This document shows, piece by piece, positions 31,741-60,049 of a stretch of 64,000 bases of DNA (positions are counted from its first letter, which is position 1; each line of letters opens with the position of its first letter). Origin of the DNA: Macrostomum lignano (lineage: Eukaryota). The position numbers and the translations under genes were made by a program. The notes below the pieces were generated by a model. The model was given only the letters and a program-made list of their open reading frames with translations, had not been told where the DNA came from and ran no database searches. The DNA is taken from positions 186,001 to 250,000 of the forward strand of contig NIVC01001049.1 of the NCBI GenBank assembly GCA_002269645.1. Direction: 5' to 3'.

Positions 31741-33429
31741 TCAGAATTTTCGCTCCGACCGGCGCTCCCGAGTGCTGCCCGTCCTGCGCTCCTTGATTTC
31801 CACCTGCAGGAAGCAGCTGTTCTCCTTGACGCACCTTTCCCTGAATTCGTCCAGCGTAGCCAGCTTCGGCTCCCCGCAGCAAACCAGGAAGTCGCCCTCT
31901 GCAGCCGTAGGCCGCTGCTTGCCTGTCGTGTCAATCGGCAAAGTCTTCACAAAGTCGTGCCGGCGGTCTTTCAGGTTGACCAGTCTGATCATGACTTCAC
32001 CGACGATCGGCCAGTCGCGGGGGTCGTCCACCTGGCTGGCGATGTGCACAATGTACACCGACAGATGGCTGTTGAAGCCAGTCTCCCAGCCGTTCAAGTA
32101 CAGCTGGATTCGGAAAGTTGGACCGAACCGGCGGAGAAAGAAAGGCACCGAGCATTCGGGAGTCAGAGACTCTCGCTGCTTTGAAGTCAGGTCCTTCAGC
32201 CTCCAGGTCAGACTGCCGTCATAGCTAGTGGATTCCAGGTCCAGCAGTCGGGTTTCCAGTTTCGCCAATTGCTGCAGCAGCGGCTGCTGAAGTGCATCCC
32301 GATTCGGCAGCACCGAGCTTGACGTCGGTGATGCATCGTTTTCCCGACCCGTCCTCCGGTGTTCAAGCTGGCGAGCTCTGTCGCCAAAGTTCTGCAGCGA
32401 CTGGCGCATCTGGGATATACCTCCGAACCTGTCAGCCACCTGCTCGAATTCAAGCATCGTGTGGGCCCAGTTAGCAACGCTTATCTGCATCTTCTTGAAT
32501 GCTTCGTGTATGCACTCCGTTTTCCGTTTCAGCTCAGAGAGCTCTTGAGCTGAATGAGGCAGTTCCTCTAAGCCGCTACGAGTAGTACGCATCGGTGGCA
32601 TCGGTGGCCCAGGAATCGCAGCGGCAGATCCAAGTTGCCGAAGCTTCTCATCTAAGAGAGTGATGTGCGCGTCCGAATCCTCCTTGTAGTGCCTCTCCAG
32701 ATCGGACCTGCGCACCATCGCCCTGCAGCCCAGGTGAGAGTACTTGCACTCTACCGGTCTCTCGGGACACTCCGACAGGTGAGAAACGTAGGCACGTCTA
32801 TCCAGCTTCTTTCTACTGTTACAGTGAGGACAGCGAGCTGAGAATCTCGGACAGCACACATCGGACTGCAGATTCCTGTGACTGGTCTCCATCTCGCTGT
32901 GTGTGACCAGCTGAGAGCACAGGTCGCAGGTCTCCTTCCTGTGGCGACACTCGCTGCTGGTGTGTCGCTGCATGTCCTTCTTCAGGATGAGCTCTTTGCA
33001 CTGCTCACAGCGGAGTGAGTGCCAGTCGCAGCTCTGTTGCACATGCTGGTCCATGCGAGCCCATTCGAGTTGGACAGAGCAGCCGGCGTCGCAGTTCGGA
33101 CAGCGGACTCGCAGCTTGGCGACCTCGCGTCTCGTCGCCATGTCGGGAAAGCAGGTAGCCTGGCTCACCTCGGTCTCGACCTCGCCGCCGCCAGCGTCCT
33201 CCTCCGAGTGGTGGTCTCTGAGTGTGCAGGCCTCGGTGTGTCCGGGACAGGGCCGCTTCTCCACCTCGTGCAGCAGGCCGGTGACGCAGGCGTGGCACAG
33301 GCGGCACCCGTGCGGAGTCTGTCGGGCGTTGAAGAGCGGCTTGTAGCAGCTGCTGCACTGCAGGTGAGCCGGCAGATTGGAGACCGGCCTCGCTGCCGAC
33401 ACTCTTTGTGGAAGTTCCAGCTGGGACAT
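31741..33429 (-). CDS. TRAF-like protein, copy A (RING, TRAF zinc fingers, coiled coil, MATH/TRAF-C), 562 aa, intronless
   Basis: RING CSSC...QTPHGCRLCHAC, TRAF-type zinc fingers (CPNCDAGC...H...C; CEQC...H...C), coiled coil, and MATH SYDGSLTWRL...LYLNG...HLSVYI...DWP...VKENSCFLQVEI. Confidence 0.93.
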   Translation of the reverse strand: MSQLELPQRVSAARPVSNLPAHLQCSSCYKPLFNARQTPHGCRLCHACVTGLLHEVEKRPCPGHTEACTLRDHHSEEDAGGGEVETEVSQATCFPDMATRREVAKLRVRCPNCDAGCSVQLEWARMDQHVQQSCDWHSLRCEQCKELILKKDMQRHTSSECRHRKETCDLCSQLVTHSEMETSHRNLQSDVCCPRFSARCPHCNSRKKLDRRAYVSHLSECPERPVECKYSHLGCRAMVRRSDLERHYKEDSDAHITLLDEKLRQLGSAAAIPGPPMPPMRTTRSGLEELPHSAQELSELKRKTECIHEAFKKMQISVANWAHTMLEFEQVADRFGGISQMRQSLQNFGDRARQLEHRRTGRENDASPTSSSVLPNRDALQQPLLQQLAKLETRLLDLESTSYDGSLTWRLKDLTSKQRESLTPECSVPFFLRRFGPTFRIQLYLNGWETGFNSHLSVYIVHIASQVDDPRDWPIVGEVMIRLVNLKDRRHDFVKTLPIDTTGKQRPTAAEGDFLVCCGEPKLATLDEFRERCVKENSCFLQVEIKERRTGSTRERRSERKF

Positions 33430-34837
33430 GGCTTACAGAGAGTGGGCTCAGTGTTTATGATAAAATTTATATAAACTTTGATGATATTGTTAGATTTCTT
33501 TTAAGTTTTAACGCTTAAAATGTCATTTGATGTAGTTCTAAACGTACTTATAAATTTTCCTTGTGCTGAAAAAAGTGTTGAGTCATTTAATATAATACGT
33601 TAAGTTTGGGGTAGTACAATTTTCGATGCAGGCAGCCAAGTAGAATCTTCCTCGAGGGTAAATGCTATTGGTGGGTCATTGGTGGGACACGAACAGCGAC
33701 AAAATATACTACCTCATGGCTGAGGTAATTTTTCGCATTGCGCCGACCAAGACGGTACTACTCAGCTGGGATGTCTTCAGGAGACTAGCCAGCAATGGCG
33801 TACTTGTTTTCCTCTCCGAGGCTATTTAGCTTGTCGTATTGTCGTATATTTTTGTATTGCATGACTCAGCGAGTGAGTCCACTCGCTGTATTACGAGCTC
33901 GTATTTTTATTGATTTATTGACCATTGTGCGTAGTGACTTATTCTCTCTTCGTGTGTGCATTCTTTTAAACCTGTAGCGCTCTTAAGCGTCTCGTGCAGC
34001 GTACGTGTTTTAGGTCTAATGGCGCTGATTAATTTTTCATAAGTTTCGTATTTGTCGTACTCAACAAACTTCAGAGTTGTTTTAGTAATAAAATTTTAAA
34101 ATTGACGCGTTCCCTGTTGTTAGGAGAGCAGGGGCTACATGACACAACCTTCGGAAACAAAGTGTTGCCGATATTGCACTTAAATATAGCTGGGAAAATT
34201 TTTTATGCCAGCTCAGTGTAAAGCAACACTTCACGGTCTTAACTTGACAAGAAAGACAAAATTAAACACCAAGTTTTCTATTTAGTTTTTATAATAGCAA
34301 TCGCCTCGAATTTTTCCTTCAAATTACCAGCTATATTTTCAGCAGGCTGTACCTCGTTACCTAAAAACTATAGCATCCTGCCTTTCTAAAGCGTTTCTTT
34401 TGTTAGCCAGTCGCTACTATAGAATAATAATTCTTCACCTCATGCCCAGTCTTATAGTATCCGTGAAGCTAAAGAGCTCAGTTGCCATTGTTGTAACTCA
34501 CTAAATATATTTAGGAGCACGTCAGATTCAAGCTAAGATTCATTCTGCTTGTACCTACTACATGTATGCCTGGTGGTTACGTGCCGTGTACTATTTTTAT
34601 CACGGCGTGTGATCTATTTTTAGCATCACCAAACAGCTCTCGGTAGGTGAACTGCACATGTGTTTGTATTTTTGCGCTTTGCCCAATAGGCATTCCAACA
34701 GCCAGCTTTAAAGTACAAATCATGAATAGTACAGAGATTCTGAGGCAATATAGAAAAAGGCCATGGCTATCCCTCCGTTGTCATGATGCGACCAGTTTTT
34801 GAATATTCTACCTATACATTGACTTTCTTACATGCTC

Positions 34838-36086
34838 TCAATCTAAGAAAACTGCAAAGGATGAAGCTGGAGCTCGCACATGGGTAGCACCGGTGTGGAG
34901 TAGAGTCGCACAGGAGAGTCGGCTGTTTGCAGCTCGGACAGCTGAAAAGACAGCGTGGGCCGTTTTTTAGAAATCAAAGACAGACCATTTTTAGTATATA
35001 GGATATTCAACATAAAAACTGCATGCAAAACTGCAACCCACCGAATAAAGCAGCTGATCAACAGACACTGCGGCACTGGTGATGGAATCCTGAGCCGATG
35101 TGACTAAATAGCGATGGGACCGCTGCGGACTCTCATCAGCTGATGGTTCTAGAATCAATGTAGCAGCGCAGCGATTGGGTACACACTGTAGTACTATGAA
35201 GAGTCGAAATAGACTAATAAATTCCTAAAGCAGACACTTTATTACTCCCAACAGAAAACTCACCATGAGACCGAAGTATGAAGATACGAAAGACAATGAA
35301 CTGCATAAACGAGTCCATGAGCTCAAGGTGAGAGTCCACGCTGTCCTTGCAGTGCCTCTCCAGATCGGACCTGCGCACCATCGCCCTGCAGCCCAGGTGA
35401 GAGTACTTGCACTCTACCGGTCTCTCGGGGCACTCCGACAGGTGAGCAACATATCCCCGCCTGTCCATCGGTGTGCTCCGCTCCGAGCAGTGAGGACAGC
35501 GAGCTGAGAATCTCGGACAGCACACATCGGACTGCAGATTCCTGTGACTGGTCTCCATCTCGCTGTGTGTGACCAGCTGAGAGCACAGGTCGCAGGTCTC
35601 CTTCCTGTGGCGACACTCGCTGCTGGTGTGTCGCTGCATGTCCTTCTTCAGAATGAGCTCTTTGCACTGCTCACAGCGGAGTGAGTGCCAGTCGCAGCTA
35701 TGTTGCACATGCTGGTCCATGCGAGCCCATTCGAGTTGGACAGAGCAGCCGGCGTCGCAGTTCGGACAGCGGACTCGCAGCTTGGCGACCTCGCGTCTCG
35801 TCGCCATGTCGGGAAAGCAGGTAGCCTGGCTCACGTCGATCTCGACCTCGCCGCCAGCGTCCTCCTCCGAGTGGTGGTCTTTGCAGGCCTCGGTGTGTCC
35901 GGGACAGGGCCGCTTCTCCACCTCGTGCAGCAGGCCGGTGACGCAGGCCTGACACAGGCGGCACCCGTGCGGAGTCTGTCGGGCGTTGAAGAGCGGCTTG
36001 GAGCAGCTGCTGCACTGCAGGTGAGCCAGCAGATCGGAGACCGGCCTGGCGGCCGACACTCTTTGTGGAAGTTCCAGCTGGGACAT
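34838..36086 (-). CDS. TRAF-like copy B (RING + zinc fingers, short unrelated tail, no MATH); exons 36086-35264 and putative 34941-34838
   Basis: Near-identical to the copy A N-terminal half. Phase-1 donor CATG|GTGAGT at 35263 and an in-frame acceptor TCTTTTCAG at 34942. Confidence 0.75.
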
Positions 36087-38049
36087 GTCTCACAGACACA
36101 GAGAGGGTTTAATGTTTCTGATAAAATAAATAAGCTGTTGCAATGATACTGCCGGATTTTTGAACAAAATTTGTCAGTTTATGTTTGAATTTCCTGTTTG
36201 ATGCTGTTCCGTACAGGTCTGAAGCAAGCTCTGAATTACTAATTATGTGCATTCTTGAATTGTGTGCATGATGTGGGCACTTTTCACTATGCGAGGCAGT
36301 TTGTCGTGTTATAAAAAATATATATGATTTTTTGTCAGTTCTGGTTTCTGCTTTTTTAATAATAGAAAGTTAGAGAGTGCTCTGGGCAGGGATTTCCCTG
36401 TTCTATTTTTAGACTTTGAACTACGCAGCTCTACGAGCTGCTGAAAGACGAACAAGTGGATTCGGGAATTGTTTTGTGCAATTCGCAGTTCATTTTCGGT
36501 GAGGGCTGCGTAAATTTGACGACTTTCGCATTGAACTAAATTTCAGAGTGAATAGTTGAACCGTTTGCTGCAAGTGAAAGTGAACCAAAAGTTAGAATGA
36601 CACTGCCGCCTTCAGATCTGAGAGCCAATATAAAAACTGAAATTCCAATGCACTCGATTGATAAATTCGTAAAAATTAAATTAGTAAATAATTGCACATT
36701 CAACTGCACTCGTAGCATTGAGAACCACCATAACGAATGTTTCTTTTTATAAGCGTTTTGTTTTCCGCATAAAATTCTACCTAATTTGTTAAAAAATGTT
36801 TAATTTTAGCTATTGCGTGTGAATTTAAAATAAAACAAGGTTTATTTTTACTCTTCAATAGTAGCTTCAATGCAGGCCGGTAGTTTAACATTCTTTTTTG
36901 TCCAATGCGTCAGACTGTTTTATGATTTTTATAAGTTTTTTATGCTTTGTTGCTCTTCTTTTAAAAAACAGATTTTGTTCGCTCGTGCGTTCGCTTCGAT
37001 AGGAATACATGTTCAAGTATCACAGGCCTCAATCCATTTGTCATGCTGGCTGTTTGCAGCACAACCTGCCTGCTACTTTTGAGACAAATCAAATGGGATC
37101 ACTTGTCTCTGGCTCAGAAAAATCATCCCACTGTTATTAGAAACTATAATTGCCATATTTATGCCAGAATAAGGAATGCGAGTATACGAGTATAATATGA
37201 GCAGAGTTACAAACTTGTTCTACTGGCACTGTAGTTACAGTCAGAAGTACCTTGACGCGCTATTTCGGGGAACTGCGTGGGGTTCTATTTCTGTGCAAAC
37301 CATGAGCGAGTTTGTTTTTAATATTCTGCCTTAAGGACATTTAGTCTGTCTTGGTATTACGAATTGGGGAAACGCCCCGACTTTCGCATGCAGAGCTTTC
37401 ATGAGAAAAATAGCAGCACTAATTGGGTTGCTCAAATTGGAAAGTCATGTAAGAAACCAACGCTTAAAACTTTAATATCTAAGTTTTTCTTAGCAGAATC
37501 GATTTGCAGTTTTACCAATTAATTTTGCTGCTTTGGCTTTGTGCTTTGGCTCAAATCTCAGCTCAAATGGGCATTACTGTTTTCTCATTTGGTCAGAGCA
37601 ACACCTCTCGTACTGACAGCAGAAACGAAAACTGTCGGCAAATTTGATAAAATTATGGATGGCATGGTTGAACCGAAATAAAACAAGGTACTACTCGTAG
37701 TAGCTTTCAGCGTCGCAAGTGCTTTGAAAATGAAAACGCCATTGAACATTGGTTTAGGGATCTCCTGTCGTTAAGCAAACAAGAATACCGATTTAGAACC
37801 CACGTCTTCCATAAAAATAAGAGCTATAGTACCATTTTTTAGTCCCAGTACACTCGTATCTATTTTGTATATCATTTTATTGAACTGCATGACTCAGACC
37901 AACTGCAAATTAATCTGAACAGACAGCACTTGAGCCGTCTAAAATTAAACATGACGTTGGAGCTAACTTTGAACAACTCCCAAGCTGTTTGACAGCTGCT
38001 TCTTGCCGTTCTTCTCGGTAAAAACTATGAAGTCTGCTGAAACACTCAG

Positions 38050-38769: not shown

Positions 38770-38890
38770 TGTTCACTGCTCCAACCACCCTACATTTGTA
38801 TATCCACTCTGCACCAAGCCGCTCTTCAACTTACAAGAGACTCCGCATAGGTGCCGCCTGCGCCAGACCTGCGTCACCAGCCTGCTGCTC
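38770..38890 (+). pseudogene. Decayed TRAF RING fragment (copy F)
   Basis: CTKPLFNLQETPHRCRLRQTCVTSLL, preceded by GTTCACTGCTCCAACC, which matches the 5' leader of copies D/E. Confidence 0.7.
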
Positions 38891-39093
38891 TCCTCGCAGT
38901 CATTTCATTGTTTTTCTAAAAATACATTATTCGCTATTCTTAGCATTTCTGACCGGACAAACTAGCAACTACATTGTACATGTACATTGTGAAATGAAAC
39001 TAACTCTATAAATTCCTGATCCCACTGGCTCTGCTTCAAGTTCCGCTCTGAAGATTTTCGAATTAAATTAGATTGTCTGCATCAACTTCAACC

Positions 39094-39921
39094 ATGTCCG
39101 AGCTGCCTTCGAGTGTGTCGGAAGCCCGGCCGGTCTCCGATCTGCCGGCTCACCTGCAGTGCAGCTGCTGCTCCAACGCCCAGTTCAACGCCTTCAACTC
39201 TTCAACGCCCGACAGACTCCGCATGGGTGCCGCCTGTGCCAGGCCTGCGTCACCGGCCTGCTGCACGAGGTGGAGAAGCGGCCCTGTCCCGGACACACCG
39301 AGGCCTGCACACTCAGAGACCACCACTCGGAGGAGGACGCTGGCGGCGAGGTCGAGATCGAGGTGAGCCAGGCTACCTGCTTTCCCGACATGGCGACGAG
39401 ACGCGAGGTCGCCAAGCTGCGAGTCCGCTGTCCGAACTGCGACGCCGGCTGCTCTGTCCAACTCGAATGGGCTCGCATGGACCAGCATGTGCAACAGAGC
39501 TGCGACTGGCACTCACTCCGCTGTGAGCAGTGCAAAGAGCTCATTCTGAAGAAGGACATGCAGCGACACACCAGCAGCGAGTGTCGCCACAGGAAGGAGA
39601 CCTGCGACCTGTGCTCTCAGCTGGTCACACACAGCGAGATGGAGACCAGTCACAGGAATCTGCAGTCCGATGTGTGCTGTCCGAGATACTCTGCTCGCTG
39701 TCCTCACTGCAACAGTAGAAAAAAACTGGATTGACGTGCTTACGTTGCTCACCTGTCGGAGTGTCCCGAGAGACCGGTAGAGTGCAAGTACTCTCACCTG
39801 GGCTGCAGGGCGATGGTGCGCAGGTCCGATCTGGAGAGGCACCACATCGACAGCGTGGACTCTCACCTTGCGCTCATGGACTCGAGGCTCTGACAGGCCG
39901 TGATAGCTCAGCGGAGTACAG
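39094..39921 (+). pseudogene. TRAF-like pseudogene, copy C
   Basis: Net +17-nt micro-duplication (TTCAACGCC repeats, 39177-39197) shifts the frame; AGA>TGA stop at 39732-4; second TGA near 39891; a homologous phase-1 donor is retained at 39922. Confidence 0.88.
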
Positions 39922-40059
39922 GTAAATAAGAACTTTTTTATAATAAAAAATATTTTAGACTTTCATTACAACAGCCCCAAGGTATGTCGTTGAGTTCAAG
40001 TGAGTCTTTGTTGCAGAAGATGAGGCAGGCCGACTTCCCTAATGTTTTTTAAACTGAGA

Positions 40060-44596: not shown

Positions 44597-47063
44597 TTAC
44601 AAGCTTGAACCAACTGGCAACTTCAGGCAGAAAACGTTGCCCGAGCATCTCCGACAAGCAGATGCAGCTGAGCATCGAATGACAGCAGCTTCATCGTAGT
44701 AACTTCGCAGCTGTGCTTGAAGTGCGACACCTGCAAAAATTGCAGGGTTCGAAATATTCTGATAATAAAAAACACAATGCGATAGAAGCTCATGAGGGAG
44801 ATTTTAAGCCGCACCTCAGCGAGCTGGTTCAGTGCAGCTCCGGCCTGCATGCGCCAGACGCTGACTTCCCCGCCGGCCGAGGCCGTGGCGAGGAACGGCA
44901 GGGCGCCGCTCAGATCGTCCGTCAGCCGGCAGAGGGCGGTGATTGGCTGCGCGTGGCACTGCAACGGGCGGTGAGCACAGTGCGATCAAATATTTCTTCT
45001 GAGGTCAGATTTTCAAGACGTTGAAATTCTCTGCAGCTGTTCAAAAAGCTTACCAGAAATCTGCTGACCACTGGGCAGAGCTGCATGTTGGAGTCCACTC
45101 TGAGCACCGAGATCCGCCCGGGTATCCCACAAGGGAATATCAGACAGGCTTCTCCGGGCAAGTCGCCGGCAGCGAATGCCTGCAGCAAGGCCGCAGCTTC
45201 GTCCAGCAAGTCGAGTCGGTCTGAAGCTCGCCAGCCTCCAACAATGGCAGGACCCGGCAACGCGGTGCGCAGCGTCGCCAAGTAAAGCCTGGGGTTGCCG
45301 AGCTGCAAGCAGAGCATGTAGCCCGGCTCCACGATCCGCAGAAGCACCGGCGGCCCAGCCGTCGCATCCAGGTCGCCGGCACTTTGGTGCCGAAGGGCGA
45401 CGAAACTGCCCTGCGCTGCCACCAAAGCCAAAGTGGAATCTTCAAAGCCTACGACTGCCGCGTGATTCTCAGGGATGGGGCAGAGGGCTGTCACGGGCGA
45501 GTGGCTGTCCAGCAGCTCTGCGACTCCGGCATTCAACATGTCACGCAGAAGCGACTCAATGCCTTGAAGTAGGAGCTGCCCACAGCGGATTCTGACCAGG
45601 CCTGTCCGCTGCTGCCAGCTGAGCAACAGAAGGCTACCCGTCGGCGAGTTCAGATGGGTCACGGCTCCCCAAGCTGATGGCGCCAGCATTCGATGCTGCA
45701 GACACATGGAGTCCAGGTGCCACAGCAGCACGGACCCGTCCGCGCCGCCAGTGGCAACAAAAGAAATGTTTCCAAGACGGCAGACTGCGGCGACTCGACT
45801 GCTGTGACCTCGGCTGAAGCCCAGCTCAGCGGGTGGCAAGTTTGAAGGATGCAGCAACTGCACTGGGCGGTCAGACGACTCGGGGTCGCGAACGGGCTGC
45901 AAGTTGAAGGCGAAAAAGCTAACACACTGCACTTGCTAAGCTAACAAACTACACTTGCTAAGCTAACACAGTGTACTTGCTAAGCTAACACAATGTACTG
46001 GCTAAGCTACGAACACAGTGTACTTGCAAGTCTTACAACATGCACTTGTTCGGCTCCACCAAAAGGAAGAGGAAAATGTTGCGTCGCAATCGACCCGCCG
46101 GTTGCAATAAAATTCGCTGAAGGCGCTGCTGGATCCTGGACAGGCTCCTGCGGCGAATCAGTCAGCCTTTCGTCAAACAAAATTCTGCTGCTGTCCGTGG
46201 CGGAGTCACGCGCTGGTCGGCTCCCAGAGTTGCCTGAGAATCCGTGAAGTTGAATAGTTTGCTACTTTTCAGAAAATTGAAGCCAGAAACACACATGACA
46301 TAAATTTGTATTTAAAAATGTTTCACTTACCAATAGCTCGCTGCAGCCGTTGAGAAGAGGCAATTTGGCGCTGAGGTGCGATCGAAGCGCCACGAGGTCT
46401 CTCGGGACACTCCGACAGGTGAGCAACATATCCCCGCCTGTCCATCGGTGTGCTCCGCTCCGAGCAGTGAGGACAGCGAGCTGAGAATCTCGGACAGCAC
46501 ACATCGGACTGCAGATTCCTGTGACTGGTCTCCATCTCGCTGTGTGTGACCAGCTGAGAGCACAGGTCGCAGGTCTCCTTCCTGTGGCGACACTCGCTGC
46601 TGGTGTGTCGCTGCATGTCCTTCTTCAGGATGAGCTCTTTGCACTGCTCACAGCGGAGTGAGTGCCAGTCGCAGCTCTGTTGCACATGCTGGTCCATGCG
46701 AGCCCATTCGAGTTGGACAGAGCAGCCGGCGTCGCAGTTCGGACAGCGGACTCGCAGCTTGGCGACCTCGCGTCTCGTCGCCATGTCGGGAAAGCAGGTA
46801 GCCTGGCTCACCTCGACCTCGACCTCGCCGCCAGCGTCCTCCTCCGAGTGGTGGTCTCTGAGTGTGCAGGCCTCGGTGTTTCCGGGACAGGGACGCTTTT
46901 CCACCTCGTGCAGCAGGCCGGTGACGCAGGCGTGGCACAGGCGGCACCCGTGCGGAGTCTGTCGGGCGTTGAAGAGCGGCTTGGAGCAGCTGCTGCACTG
47001 CAGGTGGGCCGGCAGATCGGAGACCGGCCGTGCGGCCGTCACACTCGAAGGCAGCTCGGACAT
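44597..47063 (-). CDS. TRAF-like RING/zinc-finger module fused to WD40 repeats (copy D); exons 47063-46331, 46233-46037, 45896-45054, 44958-44815, 44730-44623 (44597 if one G is restored)
   Basis: All four introns are GT-AG (97, 140, 95, 84 bp) with compatible phases 1,0,0,0, giving ~674-683 aa. WD-like units: RGHSSRVAAV...FVATGGADGSVLLWHL; SHSPVTALC...VVGFEDSTL; CHAQPITAL...FLATASAGGEVSVWRM. Confidence 0.72.
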
Positions 47064-47324
47064 GGCGGTTGAAGCAGTGAACTGTTTTCAAACGTTTTTA
47101 ATTGTCAGTTCTAAATAGGCTGCCTTCACTTTACTAGGGTTACTGCTAATGCCACAGGGTTCTACCTGAACTCTTCAGTACTGTCTACTGTACTGCAGTT
47201 ATTTCCTCTTATAAGGTTGTTCATATGGCGTGCGTTGCTTCCTTGATAAAGGCTGCCTGTGATTCTGTTTATAGGCGTTTTCATTTTAGATGAAGTTTTC
47301 CTTATTTACAAAACGTCTAAAATT

Positions 47325-47465
47325 AAATGTACTGCGGTGCTGCGAGTACACTATTAGCTACAGTGATGGAAATGCACTGCGGTGTCGTGAGTACACTATT
47401 AGCTACAGTGATGCAAATGTACTGCGGTGTCGTGAGTACACTATTAGCTACAGTGATGGAAATGT
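47325..47465. repeat. Three copies of a 45-bp unit; the surrounding 47245-47545 block is duplicated at 48535-48760
   Basis: Unit AAATGTACTGCGGTG...TACAGTGATGG; the second block has one unit and the same flanks. Confidence 0.85.
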
Positions 47466-52371: not shown

Positions 52372-55300
52372 TTAACGATACAATACCGGATTCCCGTAAT
52401 ACGCTGGGGGCACACCCCGACGCTCGCGCAGTCTGCGCGGAGACACGGCTGGCGCCGCTGGAGCCACCGGTGCGCATGGCGCAACTGGCGTTCCCGGCCC
52501 TACTATCCCATGCCGAGGCCCAACGGCAACTGGTGGCACCACATACGAGTAAAACTCCTCCTCCTCCTCAAGTTCCGGCTCTTTAGTCGCCGGCCCCGCG
52601 GGCTCCTGTCTGCACCCTGCCGGCTCAGGCGGATGCGCCGACCGGCGCTGCACTGCCGTATGCCTATTCATCAACCTGAACTGCTCAGGCCGCTCGGGTA
52701 CTTTTCGCAAATTATTATAATGCACTATTTTGCTCTTTCCCCTATTGGCGTGCTTTACCCGGTAATTCAAATCGGATATCTTCTCTAACACCTTCGCCGG
52801 CCCCTTCCAATTGCAATGGAACTTGGCTGCCTCCCCTGCCTGCAGCGCAGGCGAGTATTCTAGGACGGCATCCCCACTTCTATGGCCGGGCCTCGCACCC
52901 TTGAGTCGTACAGCACTTTCTGTTTCCTCTGGTACTGCTGCAGGTTGGTCCGCACCTGCGAATGAGCCTCAGCCAGACTATTACCTAATGACTGAACATA
53001 CGCCGGAGCACTGGCAGGAATGGACTCAGGCAAGGTTCCGATGTCCACTGGAAGCCGCATCTCCCTGGCGTACAGCATGTAGTACGGGGTGTACCCCGTG
53101 CCTCTGTGAACGCTGCTACGGTACGCCATGAGAGACGGGTGGATCAGATCCTCCCAGTCTCCTTCGCCCACCGACTCACTCATCCTGCACTTGATCATTG
53201 ACTTCAACGTCTTATTGAAACTCTCAGCCTGACCATCAGCCATCGGGTGATAGGAGGACGTTCTGCATTTCTTAACGGCAAGCAACCGACACAACTGCTT
53301 CATCAAAGCCGACTCAAAATTGGTGCCCTTATCGGTGACTAGAAATTCAGGACAACCAAAGTGCGCAATCCAGTGATCAAAAATCGCTCGCGCCACCGTC
53401 GGGGCTCGCTGATTGGACAAGGGCACCGCCACCGGCCACTTAGTAAAAGAATCCTGGATTGTCAGCACGAATCGATTGCCACCTCTGGACTTGGGCAACG
53501 GCCCGACAATGTCACTCATGATCCTCTGGAAAGCTCCTTCCGAGCAGATTGGCTGCAAAGGCGCCCGGTTGCTGCGCCCAGGCTTCGCCTTCGCACAGTG
53601 GACACAGCTCCGGCAATACTCTTCCACGGAACGACTCAGCCCCGGCCACCAGTATCTCGCCTTCACTTTCTCTTGTGTCTTCCTAACCCCAAGGTGCCCT
53701 CCTGCAACCCCATCATGAAGCTCACTGAGCACTTTCGGCAGCAAAGCCGGCGGCAGCAAGATCTTTTTCTGGCACCCACTCCCGGGACTCTGAAAATACA
53801 ACAGATCAGACTCTACTCTTATCAGCTGCCGTTGTGCCCACAGCACACGCTCCTCCCACGACATCACTCTAGGCGCACTGGGGTTCGAACCCGGGTCCAG
53901 GGCATAGGAGCGGACAGCTGCAAGCTTCTTCTCGGCCACTTGCGCCTGCTGGACTTCCTTCGAAGACAGCCCACTGCCAAACACCGCGTTCACTACTGGC
54001 ACATTCTCGCTAAACTGGCAGCTAGGGCAGCTCTCATGGCCAGCGTGTTTTCGGTACTTGCGAGACAGCGAATCAGCGTTGCCGTGCTCCTTGCCTGGCC
54101 TGTGAATGATCTCAAAGTCGAAGTTCTGGAGCGACTCAAGCCACCTTGCGCACTGACCCTCTACGTCCTTCAGACTGGCTAGCCACTGCAAAGCTTTGTG
54201 GTCTGAACGAACAGTGAACTTTCTACCTAACAAATAGTACCTATACTTTTTGACGAAGTGCACGACGGCAAGCAACTCTAACCTGGTGGTGCAATAATTT
54301 TTCTCCGCCGCATGAATCATCCTAGACCCGTAAGCGATCACCTTCTCACGGCCATCTGCTTGACGCTGTGACAGGACGGCTCCCAGCCCGACGCGCGAAC
54401 TGGCGTCCGTGTCGAGGATGAACTCCCCGGCACCAGGCGAAAAATCCGGGAATGCCATCACATTCGGTGAACACAAAGCGTCTTTCAGCCTGCAAAACGA
54501 GCTCTCCTCTTCACTACCCCACTCAAACTTCACTCCGTCTGCGGTTAACCTATACAGCGGCGCTGCAATCTCTGAAAACTGCGGGATAAATGACTGATAG
54601 TAGGCGCACGTACCCAGGAATGCCTGCACCTTCTTGGCGCTACATGGCCTCGGCCAATTCTGGATCTCCTCGCACTTGCTCGGATCCGTTGCGATCCCCT
54701 CCTGAGAGACGATGTGGCCCAGAAACTTCACCCGCTCTGCGAGGAACACACACTTGGCGGGCTTCAGCTTGACATTGGCATCCCTCAGGCACTGGAAAAC
54801 ATGCTTCAATCGCTCGAGATGCTGACCCACCGACTTGGCGAACACGACTATATCGTCAAAGTACACCAGGCACTCCTTCCAGTTAACCTCAGACAGGGCC
54901 ATAGACATTAGCCTGGCGAACGTAGCGGGAGCATTGCGCAAGCCAAAACTCATGCACTTCCAGGCGAACTGACCCCTGTTGGGTACCACGAACGCCGTTT
55001 TCAACTGGTCCTTCGGCTCAATCGGGCACTGATGATAGCCGGAGGCCAGATCCATCGTCGAGAAAACACAGTTCCCTCCTAGCGCATCAAGCGTCTCGTC
55101 CATCCGCGGCGGTGGGTAAGGATCTGGCACTGTGACCTCGTTAAGGCGCCGATAGTCTAGACACAACCTCAAGCTACCGTCGGCCTTTTTAACCGGCACG
55201 ATCGGGCTCGCCCACGGAGAGTAGCAGGGATAGATGCGATCCTGCTGCAACAACTCATCAACCTGCTTATCAATTTCCTCCTTCCAGCGCGGTGGAATCC

Positions 55301-56309
55301 TACGCGCGGGCTGACTTACTGGCTTGGCGTTGCCGGTGTCAATCTCATGCGCCATCAAGTGTGACTGTCCCAACTCCGAGCTATCCCTGGCAAAGACATC
55401 ACGATTCCGAGCCATCAGGCGCTCAAACTCGTGCTTCTCATCGCCCGTCAGGCCACATCCTCCCCACTCCTTGACATCGCTGAGGGGGTTCCAGTCGTCT
55501 CGGACACTCTCCACCGAGTTCACCTGCCACCCAGCTGGCTGCTGGGCCGCCACTGGGGAGAACCAACCAATTCGGCTTCCCTTCCTTAATGACAGACTGC
55601 ATCCTGACGTGTTCAACACCCTGACAGCCAAGCGACCGTCCCCGTCAGGCATCTGTACCGATCTGGCCACCATCTGCTCGTTACTCACTCTCCTCTCAGA
55701 CTCCACAATGCCTAGGAACTGAACCCCAGAGGGAACCCTTCTCTGCAACCTGACGTGCACCACCTTCTCTTGACCTGCATTGAACTGCTCAGGCTGACTC
55801 AGCACCAGACGGCAAAGACGCGGCTTATCTGCTGATAAGCGAAACGGATACACACAGGATGCAGTCTGCAAGCAATTCCTAGCAAAGTCAATCGCCATCC
55901 CGTGTCTCACGAAAAAGTCAGTGCCCAGAATACATGCCACAGCCAGTTCCTCGACCACAGCGAACTCGTGCAAAAACTCGGTGTCCCCAACAGAAAACTT
56001 CATCGTCACCATTCCATGTACAGCAATCGGTTCCCCATTGGCAGCGAAAACGGAAAAATTCGGCAAATTCGGCAATAAGTCAATGTCGGCTTTTTTAGAC
56101 TTCAGGAAACGGTTGCTTAACAACGACACGGTGGCCCCGCTGTCAAGCAGACATGCAATCGGGGGCCCAAACCTAAACTGTGCATCCACATAGCCCAGTC
56201 CCTGCCGACTCAGCACACTCTGGGACAAGGCCGCGGCCCCCGATGCACCCGGATTCACTGACGCTGGGGCCCGGACGGGTGCCCCGGCCGAGCCCCCAAT
56301 CCGTTTCCC
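52372..56309 (-). CDS. pol: pol (PR-RT-RNaseH-IN), expressed by -1 frameshift from gag
   Basis: LLDSGAT, YFDDIVV, ILDTDAS, HDGVAGGH...CVHC, SDIVGP/VTDKG/AESFN. The C-terminal WKGPAKV (GPY/F-like) segment is joined by restoring one G at 52872-75. Confidence 0.93.
56245..56309 (-). promoter_or_regulatory. -1 programmed ribosomal frameshift signal (G GGA AAC + H-type pseudoknot)
   Basis: Slippery heptamer 56309-56303 in the gag frame; stem 1 GGGGCUCGG/CCGGGCCCC; stem 2 GCACCCG/CGGGUGC; pol lies in the -1 frame. Confidence 0.85.
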
Positions 56310-57234
56310 GAACCCGACTGGTCCCACCGACGATAGCAGCGGTTGCGCATGTGCCCTGACTGGCCACACTCCCGGCAGACCACTGCATTACGGCACCGAG
56401 CCGTAGTATGCCCTGTCTGCAGGCACCGACCACACTGCCTCTGCTGCTGACTCTGCTCAGGGGCTCGATGCTGCAAGCTCACTTTTGGCTGCTCAGACCT
56501 TGCTGTCGCCATCGGCGCAGTGGGCGCTGCAGCACTTGCTTTTAGCTGAGCCACTTCCGCTTTCAGAGCTGCTATCTCGGCGGCTGCCCTGGACTCCTGG
56601 CTGTTGCCAGCCGCTGCGGCCTGACCCCCACCATGTGCACAGCTCGCTTGCCCTCGGGCTCCATCAGAGCCAACGATGCCCTCACTTGACGCACCCGCCT
56701 AATAGCGTCCTGGAGCGTCTCTGGCGCTTGCAGCAGCACGCTCTCCAGCACCCGGGCTGGCACCCGAATCCCCTTCAAAAACCTGTCTTTCACCAACTCT
56801 TCTCGCTGGGCCGCTGGCAGCATTGGGTACGATTTTCTCATAAGCTCCTTGAGCACGTCTGCATATTCTTCAATGGGCTCGCCATCTTTCTGATTCCTAC
56901 TCTGGAACTCGGTCTTGTAATCTTGAGCAGTCCTATTCTCATCAAACCTAGCCTCTAGCTGCTCAACAAACTCATCATACGGCAAATCATCGGCCAACTC
57001 AAGATTCGCAACAGCCTTAAAAGCAGTATTAAAGTCAAGCAGACTGAGCAGCGCCTGCTTGCGCTGATCCCCTAGAATATGAGCCGCCTCACAATACCCT
57101 GTGAATTGTTGCATCCAAAGGGCAAAGTCCTGTGTGGGCACGTACTTATTTGGCCTCGGCACCCGCTGTGCCACATTAAGTTCGTTTTGCAGACGCGCCG
57201 TCAGGGCGTCAATCAGATCGTCTAAATTGGCCAT
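56255..57234 (-). CDS. gag: gag with two CCHC zinc knuckles
   Basis: ATG at 57234 (MANLDDL); capsid-like helical region; CGRCLQTGHTTARC and CRECGQSGHMRNRC. The two ORF halves join by restoring one G at 56625-29. Confidence 0.88.
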
Positions 57235-58061
57235 GGCTACAAAAACACAGAGACAACCGAAGCAAACAACACACAAATAAACTAGGCAACACACACAACC
57301 CTAAACACACGGCAGGACAGCAGGGGAGAGGACCGCTGATCCTGGTCACGGCACCACTTGTTGTGTCTCGGCCTAATGGCCGCTGGACGGGTCAAGGTTC
57401 GGGCCCTCCCCGCCTGAGACACCCCTGTCCCAGCCCTCACCCCGGCTATTCCTACCCTGTCTCGCTCGGTTCGGCGAGAGTTCGCCTGACCGAACACCCT
57501 GGGATCGGCGAGAGTTCACCGTTCCCAGGTCCCTGCAGATCCCGGCCCCACGCGGCAACCCAGAAGAACGAAAGCTCGAGCTCACCTCCTCTTGATATAT
57601 CGAGTTACTAACGAAGCGTTTATTGGCCCGAAGCAGTTATTGGCACGCGAAGGCAGAGGTACGCCGATGAACGCAAAAACAGTAAGAACGAAGCGGACAC
57701 CAATAGAGAGCAAACGTGGAGCGCAGCCCGCTCAGGGCTAGCATTTAAATAATACACAAAAAAGGGGGAGGGGTGGGGCAGAATGGAGACGGCGAGCCAA
57801 ACCCTGGGGCCCAGCCGGCTTATCAGCCAGCCAGCCAATACGAGCAGCCCCAGGGTGAGGCGGGCAACGAGGGAGGGGGGGGGGGCACCCAGATTGGACA
57901 GAGATTGGGCCGGGGGCTGGGTGCAAAGGGCTAGGCCAGGGTTGAGACTTACGCCTCTCACAAACCCTGGCCCGGGCGCGAGACGGGGGACGGGGCGGGG
58001 TGGCATGAAAACTGAAAACAAAAGTACGAGTACATACACACTGGAAGGGCGCAGCCCAACA

Positions 58062-58290
58062 ATTACTAGAGCTTATAGACTACTAGAATAGGTTACTAGA
58101 ATTCATTTCCAGAGTTCATAGACTACTAGAATAGGTTACTAGAATTCATTTCCAGAGTTCATAGACTACTAGAATAGGTTACTAGAATTCATTTCCAGAG
58201 TTCATAGACTACTAGAATAGGTTACTAGAATTCATTTCCAGAGTTCATAGACTACTAGAATAGGTTACTAGAATTCATTACTAGAATTCA
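58062..58290. repeat. Continuation of the 30/41-bp minisatellite to the right of the LTR element
   Basis: Same CATAGACTACTAGAATAGGTTACTAG core. Confidence 0.92.
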
Positions 58291-58828
58291 CTACGTTTTA
58301 CCTTCAAGCCGTTTATAAAAATTGCCTGAGCTATTTATAGAAATTACAATGAGATGCTCAATCTCAAAAAAAACTATCAGAAGCTGAGTGAGTACATGGC
58401 CAACAAATGCATCGCACTGCTCACGCTACTCAGTGTACATCAGCAACGTAAAAGAAGCGAAATTGATCAAAGTTCTTCCTGAAACATGAAACCTTCTACT
58501 TAAAACTAAAGCTTTCTTCTACACTAACGGTGAGTAGTCAGTGATGTGTGAGTAAATTGAAAAATGAAAAACGAAAATTGAGTAATAGTAATAAAACGAG
58601 AACCGTAACTCATAAAGCCTATAAACAGAATCACAGAAGCCTTTAACAAGGAAGCAACGCACGCGATATGAACAACCTTATTCAGAGGAAGAGCTGCAGT
58701 ACAGTAGACAGTACTGAAGAGTTTAGGTAGAACCCTGTGGCATTAGCAGTAACCCTAGTAAAGTGAAGGCAACATATTTAAGACTGACAATTGAAAACGT
58801 TTGAAAACAGTTCACTGCTTCAACCGCC

Positions 58829-60049
58829 ATGTCCGAGCTGCCTTCGAGTGTCGTGGCTGCCCGGCCGGTCTCCGATCTGCCGGCTCACCTGCAGTGCAGC
58901 AGCTGCTCCAAGCCGCTCTTCAACGCCCGACAGACTCCGCACGGGTGCCGCCTGTGCCAGGCCTGCGTCACCGGCCTGCTGCACGAGGTGGAGAAGCGGC
59001 CCTGTCCCGGACACACCGAGGCCTGTACACTCAGAGACCACCACTCGGAGGAGGACGCTAGCGGCCAGGTCGAGGTCGAGGTGAGCCAGGCTACCTGCTT
59101 TCCCGACATGGCGACGAGACGCGAGGTCGCCAAGCTGCGAGTCCGCTGTCCGAACTGCGACGCCGGCTGCTCTGTCCAACTCGAATGGGCTCGCATGGAC
59201 CAGCATGTTCAACAGAGCTGCGACTGGCACTCACTCCGCTGTGAGCAGTGCAAAGAGCTCATCCTGAAGAAGGACATGCAGCGACACACCAGCAGCGAGT
59301 GTCGCCACAGGAAGGAGACCTGTGACCTGTGCTCTCAGCTGGTCACACACAGCGAAATGGAGACCAGTCACAGGAATCTGCAGTCCGATGTGTGCTGTCC
59401 GAGATTCTCAGCTCGCTGTCCTCACTGCTCGGAGCGGAGCACGCCGATGGACAGGCGGGGATATGTTGCTCACCTGTCGGAGTGTCCCGAGAGACCGGTA
59501 GAGTGCAAGTACTCTCACCTGGGCTGCAGGGCGATGGTGCGCAGGTCCGATCTGGAGAGGCACTACAGAGAAAGCATGGACTCTCACCTTGAGCTCATGG
59601 ACTCGAAACTGAAGCAGGCAGCGATAGCTCAGCAGAGTCCTGGTGAGATTTGCTTTCCAAATCAGTAAATTGGTTAACCAGAAAAAGCTGCTACGAGCGT
59701 ATTTTCGGATATTAAAAAAAAATTTATACTTTTAGTATCTGCGGTCCCGCAGTCTTCTGTCGGTGCCGGAGCTCTTGCCGCCACAGCCACCGATGGACGC
59801 GATGTGGTCGACGTGAAGCGGCGAGTCGGCAGCGTCTTCGAGCAGTTCAAGAAGCTGCAGGTCAACGTGGCGAACTGGGCTCACAGCACCATGGAGCTCG
59901 AGCAGCTGGCTGACAGGTTCGGAGGCGTCTCGCAGCTGCGGACTCTGCTGAGCGGACTGGACGAGCGGACGAGGAGCGTCGAGCAGCTGCAGCAGCAGGT
60001 GCAGGAGCTCCAGCAGCAGGTGCAGCAGCTGCAGCGACATCGAGCCTGA
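58829..60049 (+). CDS. TRAF-like copy E (RING + zinc fingers + coiled coil, no MATH), 375 aa; exons 58829-59642 and 59736-60049
   Basis: 93-bp phase-1 GT-AG intron. Exon 2 (FEQFKKLQVNVANWAHSTMELEQLADRFGGVSQLR) is homologous to the copy A coiled coil and then stops. Confidence 0.88.

What the first reader, a model, noticed from the sequence alone, without database searches (positions are those of the whole stretch)
31741..60049. TRAF cluster behaving as an exon-shuffling cassette: one RING-ZF module, different C-termini
Seen: five near-identical RING-ZF modules plus a fragment. Copies B, C, D and E all end the module in a phase-1 donor (CATG|GT, ACAG|GT, ATTG|GT, CCTG|GT) and join respectively a short tail, nothing functional, WD40 repeats and a coiled coil. 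Copy A is intronless and carries coiled coil + MATH. Inference: a self-contained promoter + ATG + E3 module with a phase-1 donor can capture any downstream phase-1 exon, generating a diversified immune or stress-signalling ubiquitin-ligase repertoire by birth-and-death evolution.
Basis: partly seen in the sequence, partly recalled or inferred. Interest (0 to 1): 0.75.

Follow-up and report, generated by a model that had tools for sequence, protein, structure and literature searches.

The report
Flatworm TRAF gene cluster, gene-converted
This is a cluster of five copies of a TRAF-like signalling gene in the flatworm Macrostomum lignano whose shared first part is kept almost identical by copying between copies; one copy is probably fused to an unrelated WD40-like gene, and the rest is ordinary gene-family turnover.

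Summary
Window 31741-60049 contains five copies (91-96% nt identity) of a roughly 670-830 nt RING-like plus TRAF zinc-finger coding module, and an 80-nt fragment. The four named donors exist and all are phase 1. The organism is Macrostomum lignano: spliced E is 100% identical to UniRef A0A1I8GNY0.

The "exon-shuffling cassette" reading is only partly supported.
- The phase-1 intron of C and E is inherited. At least nine E-type copies, in the window and two other M. lignano loci, share it.
- E's coiled-coil exon is homologous to A's coiled coil, so it was not captured.
- No upstream sequence is common to all copies.
- In D the homology breaks inside the exon, 65 nt before the donor. That donor probably belongs to a pre-existing WD40-like gene.

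The near-identity is mosaic. Of 1081 informative site pairs, 404 fail the four-gamete test (Rmin 12). The core differs by 2.6% between copies, while flanks and introns are largely unalignable. I read this as gene conversion plus purifying selection.

Copy by copy: A is a full TRAF. E is the common type without a MATH domain. B is truncated. C is a pseudogene. D is a candidate in-frame five-exon TRAF-WD40 chimera (674 aa) without transcript evidence.

Interest is moderate to low.

The parts
31741..33429 (-). Copy A: intronless 562-aa ORF with a RING-like region, TRAF zinc fingers, a helical/coiled-coil region and a MATH (TRAF-C) domain. It is the only full-length TRAF in the cluster.
   Evidence: ORF. 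Pfam zf-TRAF 45.4 bits (cut-off 27) and MATH_2 45.2 bits (cut-off 32). Fish TRAF5 proteins align over 84-94% of its length.
35264..36086 (-). Copy B exon 1 (823 nt, phase 1, donor CATG|GTGAGT at 35264|35263). Homology to the other copies ends at 35310. After that comes AT-rich sequence and a short tail. The product is 290 aa unspliced, or about 308 aa if spliced to 34941.
   Evidence: No coiled-coil or MATH remnant downstream. GC falls from 0.61 to 0.43 after the exon.
38809..38888 (+). Fragment of the RING-coding part of the module, about 200 nt upstream of copy C.
   Evidence: 86% nt identity over 80 nt to module positions 290-369, E = 1.6e-21. tblastn hits at 38810-38887.
39086..39923 (+). 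Copy C: pseudogene. It has a 17-nt insertion after codon 30, AGA>TGA in zinc finger 3 and a further TGA near the 3' end. Its donor ACAG|GTAAAT is homologous to E's. No downstream exon was found.
   Evidence: Alignment. The ORF is broken. C versus E in the last 37 nt of the exon: score 15 against a shuffle mean of -5, 0 of 2000 shuffles reaching it. No coiled-coil motif within 700 nt.
46396..47279 (-). The block of copy D that is homologous to E: 215 nt of upstream sequence plus the first 668 nt of coding sequence (RING-like region and zinc fingers 1-3). It is truncated between fingers 3 and 4.
   Evidence: 96.3% identity over 885 nt to 58614-59496. Both edges are sharp.
46331..47063 (-). Copy D exon 1 (733 nt, phase 1). 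Its last 65 nt (46395-46331) are unique sequence ending in ATTG|GTAAGT.
   Evidence: Joining the two flanks of the block gives ATG AAT CGT GGC ... in the same frame as the unique tail.
46037..46233 (-). D exon 2 (197 nt, phase 1 to phase 0). It is open only in the required frame.
   Evidence: The other two frames contain stops. GC is 0.56, against 0.31 and 0.42 in the flanking introns.
45054..45896 (-). D exon 3 (843 nt): the main part of the WD40-like region, including the best WD40 repeat.
   Evidence: WD40 26.0 bits, cut-off 27; 254 proteins at E <= 0.001, and the M. lignano paralogue P0026 at E = 2e-43.
44815..44958 (-). D exon 4 (144 nt): a second recognisable WD40-like repeat (...LATASAGGEVSVWRM...).
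   Evidence: The exon 3/4 and 4/5 junctions are contiguous in paralogues P0026 and P0176.
44623..44730 (-). D exon 5 (108 nt including the stop codon).
58614..59642 (+). Copy E: 215 nt of upstream sequence shared with D, plus exon 1 (58829-59642, 814 nt, phase 1, donor CCTG|GTGAGA).
   Evidence: The product is identical to UniRef A0A1I8GNY0.
59736..60049 (+). Copy E exon 2: linker plus a long helical (coiled-coil-like) region, a stop codon, and AATAAA directly after the stop. There is no MATH domain.
   Evidence: AlphaFold2 helices at 292-332 and 336-374. Homologous to the coiled-coil region of A.

Best explanation
The region is a lineage-specific cluster of TRAF-like paralogues of Macrostomum lignano. 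The family evolves by tandem and inverted duplication, partial duplication and decay. Its RING-like/zinc-finger coding exon is kept nearly identical across copies by gene conversion or unequal recombination, together with purifying selection.

What each copy is:
- A is the complete, intronless TRAF (RING-like region, four zinc fingers, coiled coil, MATH).
- E is the common subfamily form. It has the same module, a roughly 93-nt phase-1 intron lying in a disordered linker, and one exon encoding the coiled coil followed by a stop. It has no MATH domain.
- C is an E-type pseudogene.
- B is a mosaic, A-like at its 5' end and E-like after that. It lost everything beyond the zinc fingers.
- D arose when an 884-bp 5' piece of an E-like gene (215 nt upstream plus 668 nt of coding sequence) was pasted in frame just after the start codon of a pre-existing WD40-like gene. 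The result is a five-exon, 674-aa open reading frame: RING-like region, zinc fingers 1-3, WD40-like region.

How the products would work (inferred). From the TRAF6 RING-zinc-finger structures, the module would be an E2-binding, dimerising ubiquitin-ligase unit. The coiled coil would oligomerise. MATH would dock A on receptors. The E-type proteins without MATH would act as co-oligomerising modulators or as receptor-independent ligases. D would aim the ligase unit at whatever its WD40-like part binds.

Shown here: the anatomy, the reading frames, the homologies and the recombination mosaic. Inferred: transcription of the window's own copies, ligase activity and any immune role.
For: Species and family.
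- One search gives M. lignano TRAF-type proteins as the best hits.
- Spliced E is 100% identical to P0181 over 313 aa.
- The module aligns to the TRAF6 RING-zinc-finger structure 3HCS (residues 22-183, E = 2e-10).

The family is multi-copy elsewhere. L001 holds five modules and L002 three. For six of these eight a coiled-coil motif was found within 700 nt of the module; none was found for L1d, and L2b has only a distant, about 71%-identical match.

Gene conversion.
- The core is 96-100% identical in every pair, pseudogene C included. The groupings change along the module: A,B against C,D,E at the 5' end, and A,C against B,D,E in a 40-nt patch.
- Across 13 copies there are 47 informative sites. 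404 of 1081 site pairs are four-gamete incompatible, and Rmin is 12.
- Mean pairwise difference is 16.6% in the 5' 90 nt, 2.6% in the core, 17% in the patch (maximum 41%) and 0.6% after the patch.
- Introns and upstream regions of the same copies are largely unalignable.
- A versus E beyond the module is only 78% nt over 100 nt and 37-47% aa.

Selection. In codons 88-190 the changes are mostly synonymous.

Intron history. P0004 (49% identical, with MATH) is intronless. The E-type donor position is shared by at least nine copies.

Copy D.
- All five exons are in frame with GT-AG sites. Introns measure 84-140 nt, against 93 nt in E.
- Exon GC is 0.53-0.72 against 0.31-0.44 in the introns, and exon 2 is open only in the required frame.
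- The WD40-like part has M. lignano paralogues at 45-47% identity that run contiguously across the exon 3/4/5 junctions.
- The joined flanks give an in-frame ATG.

E-type paralogues at other loci are transcribed. The BOX15 gene models come from an RNA-seq-guided transcriptome assembly (PMC5730564).
Against: - There is no transcript evidence for the window's own A, B or D. The ORFs of A and D are not on record in the assembly collection, and no database protein contains D's exon 3.
- The left junction of the D block lies in a run of A and is ambiguous by up to 3 nt. An in-frame ATG within the eight open codons upstream would arise by chance in roughly 12-35% of cases (my estimate). No target-site duplication was seen.
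- The known WD40-like paralogues are N-terminally incomplete models, so the ancestral first exon cannot be checked.
- WD40 scores just under the Pfam cut-off, and the AlphaFold2 model of that part is uninformative (pLDDT 37.8).
- D and L2b carry H62N at the position aligned with the last RING ligand of TRAF6. This may weaken zinc binding.
- Very recent duplications combined with strong selection could mimic part of the core-versus-flank contrast.
Confidence: 0.7

Rival explanations
1. The module (promoter + ATG + RING-zinc-finger exon + its own phase-1 donor) is a mobile exon-shuffling cassette. It lands upstream of unrelated phase-1 exons and captures them, producing a diversified ligase repertoire.
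For: All four donors are phase 1. The C-termini differ. D does read in frame into a WD40-like gene. D and E share 215 nt of upstream sequence that could carry a promoter.
Against: The C and E donor is one inherited intron position, shared by at least nine E-type copies. E's partner exon is homologous to A's coiled coil. D's homology ends 65 nt before its donor, inside the exon, and that donor most likely belongs to the recipient gene. No upstream sequence is shared by all copies. In 13 sampled copies only one foreign partner (D) is seen.
Confidence: 0.1
2. There was a very recent burst of duplication without gene conversion. The copies are near-identical simply because they are young, and the different flanks reflect the small size of the duplicated unit.
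For: The core is 98-100% identical even in pseudogene C. Homology starts close to the ATG in most copies.
Against: 404 of 1081 site pairs are four-gamete incompatible and Rmin is 12. Segment groupings conflict (A,B against C,D,E versus A,C against B,D,E). A and E share a diverged coiled-coil region (78% nt, 37-47% aa) next to a 98-100% identical core. E-type copies share an intron position but have diverged introns.
Confidence: 0.1
3. B, C and D are all dead partial duplicates. D's in-frame chain to the WD40-like exons is an untranscribed coincidence, or the WD40-like gene was killed by the insertion.
For: No transcript or database protein exists for D. D has H62N at a putative RING ligand. 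C is clearly dead and B has no partner. An in-frame junction has a one-in-three prior.
Against: About 430 codons in D exons 2-5 remain open, with four intact GT-AG introns. This holds even though the D block differs from E by about 7% in the shared non-coding 215 nt. Exon 2 is open only in the frame set by exon 1. No other in-frame ATG can start exons 2-5 upstream of exon 3 (read from the sequence).
Confidence: 0.3
4. The copies are haplotype or assembly redundancy, that is, mis-assembled alleles or homeologues of this neopolyploid genome.
For: The DV1 line's Mlig_3_7 assembly has 180 Mb in non-repetitive duplicated blocks at >= 95% identity (PMC5730564).
Against: The five copies lie on one contiguous sequence, in both orientations, with unrelated flanks, copy-specific indels and different 3' ends. 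The Mlig_3_7 assembly shows comparable multi-copy clusters on two other contigs. E matches a separately deposited protein model exactly.
Confidence: 0.03

Closest known systems
Lineage-specific TRAF expansions in invertebrates (planarian Schmidtea mediterranea, PMC6109357; Pacific oyster, PMC4346834)
   Same: Many TRAF-like paralogues, partly in tandem pairs or clusters, presumed to act in immune or stress signalling. The RING/zinc-finger region is homologous to TRAF6 and TRAF5, and copy A has MATH.
   Different: Those expansions were counted through the MATH domain. Here most copies lack MATH, and the N-terminal exon is homogenised between copies. Nothing was found in the literature held here on the Macrostomum family.
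TRAF7 (RING + TRAF zinc finger + coiled coil + 4-7 WD40 repeats; PMC7179693)
   Same: Copy D's conceptual product has the same order of parts: a TRAF-type RING-like region and zinc fingers followed by a WD40-like C-terminus instead of MATH.
   Different: It is not an orthologue. D's module is 96-97% identical to its neighbours. Its WD40-like part has specific relatives only in M. lignano and only weak PDB matches, to Elp2 and a RACK1-like protein. It has no coiled coil. If real, the architecture arose independently.
Concerted evolution by gene conversion in tandem multigene families
   Same: A homogenised tract with sharp edges, diverged flanks, a mosaic of shared variants, and homogenisation of a pseudogene.
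   Different: The tract covers only the 5' coding exon. It contains a 40-nt patch with three very different haplotypes and a variable acidic linker.
Chimeric genes formed by partial gene duplication (the jingwei type of Drosophila; named from my own knowledge)
   Same: In D, a 5' fragment of a parent gene, with some upstream sequence, is joined in frame to another gene, with breakpoints inside an exon.
   Different: DNA-based: there is no poly(A) tract or spliced-leader remnant. Expression has not been shown.
Classical exon shuffling of phase 1-1 modules (Patthy; named from my own knowledge)
   Same: A phase-1 boundary lies at the 3' end of the module.
   Different: The module is a first exon with no 5' intron. 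The breakpoints in D are exonic. The usual partner exon is ancestral.

Membership tests
TRAF family (TRAF1-6 type) | N-terminal RING finger (C3HC3D) | tested here: inconclusive
   phmmer aligns residues 22-183 to the TRAF6 RING-zinc-finger structure 3HCS (E = 2e-10). The AlphaFold2 pLDDT is 76-82 over residues 11-60. However, no Pfam RING model hits, and ligands 3 and 4 read QTPHGCRLC against TRAF6's QTPCGHRFC. Zinc binding was not tested.
TRAF family (TRAF1-6 type) | TRAF-type zinc fingers (PF02176) | tested here: met
   A 45.4, B 41.8 and E 44.5 bits against a cut-off of 27. C (23.0) and D (22.5) fall below the cut-off as separate ORFs because they are truncated or broken.
TRAF family (TRAF1-6 type) | Coiled coil (TRAF-N) | tested here: inconclusive
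   AlphaFold2 predicts long helices at 292-332 and 336-374 of E (pLDDT 64-81). Heptad a/d occupancy reaches 7 of 8, but 17% of shuffles reach 7. Oligomerisation was not tested. B, C and D have no such region.
TRAF family (TRAF1-6 type) | C-terminal TRAF-C/MATH domain | tested here: not met
   Present only in A (MATH_2 45.2 bits, cut-off 32). tblastn with A's MATH finds nothing else in the window. E ends at a stop followed by AATAAA. So A is a member, and B-E are TRAF-derived proteins without MATH.
TRAF7-like (RING, zinc finger, WD40) | One polypeptide joining a TRAF RING/zinc finger to WD40 repeats | tested here: inconclusive
   The five-exon conceptual splice of D is in frame (674 aa). There is no transcript or database protein.
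TRAF7-like (RING, zinc finger, WD40) | WD40 domain above the curated threshold | tested here: not met
   PF00400 scores 26.0 bits against a cut-off of 27. 254 proteins match at E <= 0.001, but the generic WD40 hits lie mostly on the first repeat. The structure model is uninformative (pLDDT 37.8).
TRAF7-like (RING, zinc finger, WD40) | Orthology to TRAF7 | tested here: not met
   D's module is a copy of the local family (96-97% nt). Its WD40-like part has specific relatives only in M. lignano, and no TRAF7 appears among the PDB matches.
Exon-shuffling module | Module bounded by introns of the same phase on both sides | tested here: not met
   The module begins at the start codon of the first exon. 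Homology among all copies starts at the ATG.
Exon-shuffling module | Duplication breakpoints fall in introns, so the donor travels with the module | tested here: not met
   D's breakpoint at 46396 lies inside the exon, 65 nt before the donor. B's homology ends at 35310, 46 nt before its donor, and the donor's own homology is doubtful (p about 0.05). C and E share the donor by descent.
Concerted evolution / gene conversion | Recombination mosaic among paralogues | tested here: met
   404 of 1081 informative site pairs show four gametes, and Rmin is 12. Segment groupings conflict.
Concerted evolution / gene conversion | Homogenised tract next to diverged homologous flanks | tested here: met
   The core differs by 2.6% on average. 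In contrast, the A/E coiled-coil region is 78% nt and 37-47% aa identical, and introns of E-type copies are largely unalignable.
Processed retrogene (for copy A) | Poly(A) tract, target-site duplication or spliced-leader remnant; intron-bearing parent gene | tested here: not met
   There is no poly(A) tract after A's 3' end and no spliced-leader-like sequence near any copy (the leader sequence was recalled from memory). The outgroup paralogue P0004 is also intronless, so the intronless state is probably ancestral.
Chimeric gene by partial duplication (for copy D) | The recipient gene exists independently, and the empty site restores its reading frame | tested here: inconclusive
   Independent WD40-like paralogues exist (P0026 and P0176), but they lack N-termini. 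Joining the flanks gives ATG AAT CGT... in frame, but the junction is ambiguous by up to 3 nt.

The most novel reading that the evidence does not exclude
Copy D is a functional, independently evolved TRAF7-like ubiquitin ligase. It was created by pasting the promoter-proximal 884 bp of a TRAF gene in frame behind the start codon of a WD40-like gene. More broadly, the family may combine a conversion-homogenised ligase core with a few hypervariable patches (the acidic linker, and a 40-nt patch in zinc finger 3 with three haplotypes) and interchangeable C-termini. That would make it a recombination-driven signalling repertoire in a flatworm.
Probability: 0.25. Interest if true: 0.6.

Novelty: new member of a known kind. 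Interest (0 to 1): 0.35.

Why it matters
TRAF expansions are reported in planarians and molluscs, but how they diversify is little studied. This cluster shows in one 28-kb stretch the whole life cycle of such a family: a complete gene, a common derivative without MATH, a truncated copy, a pseudogene and a candidate chimera. It also shows that the shared ligase-coding exon is held together by recombination between copies.

There are practical consequences for work on M. lignano. Short RNA-seq reads cannot be assigned to individual copies across the roughly 560-nt near-identical core. RNAi or knock-outs aimed at the module will hit the whole family. Existing gene models already merge tandem copies (P0001, P0005).

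If D is expressed, it would be a dated, mechanistically transparent example of a TRAF7-like architecture arising a second time.

Tried and rejected
1. A as a processed retrocopy: no poly(A) tract, and the outgroup P0004 is also intronless. Rejected.
2. Spread by retroposition of trans-spliced mRNA: no spliced-leader-like sequence near any copy (the leader was recalled from memory, so this is a weak test).
3. A word-indexed protein search with the unspliced WD40 ORF found nothing. The exhaustive HMMER search was needed to find P0026.
4. AlphaFold2 on the WD40-like part gave pLDDT 37.8 and was unusable, so no fold search was run.
5. Exact-protein look-ups of the A and D ORFs were not on record. 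The paralogous WD40-like locus therefore could not be examined.
6. A RING-like remnant downstream of B (34946-34830) scored E = 0.55 and is not significant.
7. Homology of B's donor to E's is borderline (p about 0.05 for the exon end, 0.11 for the intron start). Left open.
8. L001 and L002 contain no WD40-like homologue, so TRAF/WD40 adjacency is not a general feature of the family's loci.
9. The closeness of UniProt accession numbers for a TRAF-like and a WD40-like M. lignano protein (A0A1I8G627 and G632) hints at neighbouring genes elsewhere. It is not evidence and was not used.

Full report
OBSERVATION.

A self-comparison of the window and a five-way alignment confirm five copies of one module:
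- A 32681-33497(-)
- B 35310-36159(-)
- C 39086-39923(+)
- D 46396-47279(-)
- E 58614-59644(+)

They are 91-96% identical in pairs. An 80-nt fragment lies at 38809-38888, 86% identical to the RING-coding part.

The first exons of B, D and E measure 823, 733 and 814 nt, so all are phase 1.

Copy A (31741-33429, minus strand) is a single 562-aa ORF. It has TRAF zinc fingers (45.4 bits, cut-off 27) and a MATH domain (45.2 bits, cut-off 32).

ORGANISM AND FAMILY.

The best protein hits are "TRAF-type domain-containing" proteins of the flatworm Macrostomum lignano. Fish TRAF5 proteins follow at 23-27% identity.

Spliced E (58829-59642 + 59736-60049, 375 aa) is 100% identical over 313 residues to UniRef A0A1I8GNY0 (P0181), and the match includes the exon junction. 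The window is therefore M. lignano, and E's splice is the one already used in a deposited gene model.

The module aligns to the crystallised RING-zinc-finger part of TRAF6 (3HCS, residues 22-183, E = 2e-10). The RING is unusual. No Pfam RING model hits. The third and fourth metal ligands read H-x-C (QTPHGCRLC) where TRAF6 has C-x-H (QTPCGHRFC). The distant paralogue P0004 has the same swap.

An AlphaFold2 model of E (pLDDT 65.6) shows a confident N-terminal region and a disordered linker at 269-293. The intron falls in this linker. Two long helices follow at 292-374.

THE FAMILY ELSEWHERE.

Two other loci of the Mlig_3_7 assembly were fetched: L001 (contig NIVC01000672.1) and L002 (NIVC01002933.1). 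They carry five and three further modules. For six of these eight a coiled-coil motif lies within 700 nt of the module. None was found for L1d, and L2b has only a distant, about 71%-identical match. Their flanks do not match the window.

The GenBank gene models at those loci derive from an RNA-seq-guided transcriptome assembly (PMC5730564). E-type genes are therefore transcribed and spliced at this junction somewhere in the genome.

Seven E-type copies align at the phase-1 donor position, with introns of about 85-120 nt whose sequences have diverged into several groups. L1d and L2b carry a GTAAGT donor at what looks like the same position. C's donor is clearly homologous to E's: 0 of 2000 shuffles reach its alignment score. 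B's is doubtful (p about 0.05).

WHY THE MODULES ARE NEAR-IDENTICAL.

Identity is not uniform along the module.
- A roughly 560-nt core is 96-100% identical in every pair, pseudogene C included.
- The first 90 nt split the copies into A,B against C,D,E.
- A 40-nt patch in zinc finger 3 splits them into A,C against B,D,E, with only about 62% identity between the groups.
- L1e and L2c carry a third patch haplotype.

Across 13 copies there are 47 biallelic informative sites. Of 1081 site pairs, 404 show all four gametes, and Rmin is 12. Mean pairwise difference is 16.6% in the 5' end, 2.6% in the core, 17% in the patch (maximum 41%) and 0.6% after the patch.

Beyond the module, A and E are still homologous but old: 78% nt over only 100 nt, and 37-47% aa. 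Upstream regions and introns are largely unalignable.

This is the signature of gene conversion or unequal recombination between long-standing paralogues. In codons 88-190 the few changes are mostly synonymous, so purifying selection acts as well.

COPY BY COPY.

A is the complete TRAF. It shows no poly(A) tract. P0004, the only other MATH-bearing M. lignano relative found (49% identity), is encoded by an uninterrupted 1890-bp gene. The intronless state is therefore probably ancestral, and the phase-1 intron is a derived feature of the subfamily without MATH.

E ends with a stop followed at once by AATAAA.

C has an intact ATG, a 17-nt frameshifting insertion, AGA>TGA in zinc finger 3 and a further TGA. 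It has no downstream exon.

B is A-like at its 5' end, sharing about 70 nt upstream, and E-like afterwards. Its homology stops at 35310. AT-rich sequence follows, and it either reads through to a stop (290 aa) or could splice to a 34-codon tail. No coiled-coil or MATH remnant follows.

COPY D.

D shares 215 nt of upstream sequence and 668 nt of coding sequence with E (96.3% identity). It breaks off sharply after ...CCCGAGAGACC, between zinc fingers 3 and 4. This point is 65 nt before its donor.

From there a chain of exons stays in frame:
- 46395-46331, the unique tail of exon 1, ending in GTAAGT
- 46233-46037
- 45896-45054
- 44958-44815
- 44730-44623

The chain gives a 674-aa product. All introns are GT-AG and measure 84-140 nt. 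Exon GC is 0.53-0.72 against 0.31-0.44 in the introns, and exon 2 is open only in the required frame.

The C-terminal 364 residues match one WD40 repeat just under the Pfam cut-off (26.0 against 27 bits). They also match 254 proteins at E <= 0.001, generic WD40 proteins whose best matches lie mostly on the first repeat. One specific relative was found there, P0026 of M. lignano (E = 2e-43, 47% identity). A second, P0176, was found. Both run contiguously across D's exon 3/4 and 4/5 junctions, which supports those splices.

Joining the two flanks of the E-homologous block gives ...TCTAAAATGAA|TCGTGGCGC..., that is ATG AAT CGT GGC in the very frame of D's unique tail. The simplest reading has three parts:
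- A WD40-like gene with a short first exon and its own phase-1 donor already existed.
- An 884-bp 5' piece of an E-like gene was pasted in frame behind its start codon.
- The donor D uses is therefore the recipient's, not the module's.

This step is inferred. The left junction lies in a run of A and is ambiguous by up to 3 nt. The paralogues lack N-termini. No transcript or database protein for D exists. The structure model of the WD40-like part is useless (pLDDT 37.8).

VERDICT ON THE INTERPRETATION.

"One module, different C-termini" is correct. "Exon-shuffling cassette" is not the best description, for five reasons:
- The intron position of C and E is inherited.
- E's partner exon is ancestral TRAF sequence.
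- No common promoter is part of the module.
- D's breakpoints are exonic.
- Among 13 sampled copies only D has a foreign partner.

Assembly redundancy is unlikely. The copies differ in orientation, flanks, indels and 3' ends, and the Mlig_3_7 assembly shows similar clusters on other contigs. Read depth could not be checked.

COMPARISON WITH WHAT IS KNOWN.

TRAF expansions are described in planarians (PMC6109357) and oysters (PMC4346834). TRAF7 is the known TRAF with WD40 repeats in place of MATH (PMC7179693).

A is a TRAF by all domain tests except the atypical RING. B-E are TRAF-derived proteins without MATH. D is not a TRAF7 orthologue. If real, it is an independent invention of the same layout.

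The mechanisms involved are all known kinds: tandem and inverted duplication, gene conversion, and partial duplication giving a chimera. I found nothing in the literature held here on this Macrostomum family.

SCORES.

This is a new member of a known kind, with interest 0.35. The most novel reading still open is a functional, convergently evolved TRAF7-like ligase inside a recombination-driven repertoire. I give it a probability of about 0.25, and it would deserve an interest of about 0.6.

Noticed in passing
window 49420-58061: A young LTR retrotransposon on the minus strand lies between D and E. Its LTRs (49420-50119 and 57359-58061) are 99.6% identical. It has gag (56572-57294) and pol in the order protease, RT, RNase H, integrase (52860-56369), which is the Ty3/gypsy arrangement. 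Without it, the D-E head-to-head spacer would be about 2.7 kb, similar to the 2.9-kb B-C spacer.
   Followed up: partly
window 50360-51801 (-): Two extra ORFs (238 and 227 aa) sit between pol and the 3' LTR of that element. One has a TatD-like DNase match just under the Pfam cut-off (26.1 against 27 bits). They may be a captured or accessory gene of the retrotransposon.
   Followed up: no
window 49087-49413 and 58068-58290: The same roughly 43-nt satellite abuts both ends of the LTR element. The element therefore appears to have inserted into a tandem-repeat array.
   Followed up: no
window 29706-31007 (-): Transposon debris lies next to A's 3' end. One ORF has a weak reverse-transcriptase match and a YADD motif. 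Another ORF has a ...GHSLRRGGA...GDWRS... motif that recalls tyrosine recombinases (from my own knowledge; no Pfam hit).
   Followed up: partly
window 38049-38478, 47325-47466, 60682-61242, 63095-63523, 297-1186: Tandem-repeat arrays flank the TRAF copies: a 28-mer x15, a 45-mer x3 and a 16-mer x35. The 11-mer array at 63095-63523 has an inverted, 71-74% identical counterpart at 297-1186, where GC skew reaches -0.63. Such arrays might favour the recombination seen between copies.
   Followed up: no
window 45916-46046 and 41715-41824: A 22-nt tandem repeat fills most of D's intron 2 and recurs 4 kb away. Degenerate repeats of 64-67% identity also link 40053-41567 with 42184-43798. No ORFs lie there.
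   Followed up: partly
module codons 69-87 and 192-210 (for example window 59033-59089 and 59402-59458 in E): Within the otherwise invariant module, changes cluster in two places. One is an acidic/Gly linker with indels. The other is a patch in zinc finger 3 with three haplotypes: SERSTPMDRRGYVAH, NSRKKLDRRAYVSH, and the L1e/L2c type. These are mostly amino-acid changes. Whether this reflects diversifying selection was not tested.
   Followed up: partly
L001 10001-23933 (gene of P0005); P0001: Deposited M. lignano gene models join several tandem modules. The gene of P0005 spans 13.9 kb over three modules and starts in a shifted frame. P0001 contains one and a half modules twice. This is either real read-through and splicing between tandem paralogues, or mis-assembly of multi-mapping reads.
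   Followed up: no
window 46878-46880 (D codon 62); also L2b: H62N (CAC>AAC) lies in CPGH, the position aligned with the last RING ligand (CPVD) of TRAF6. It could weaken the second zinc site in D.
   Followed up: no
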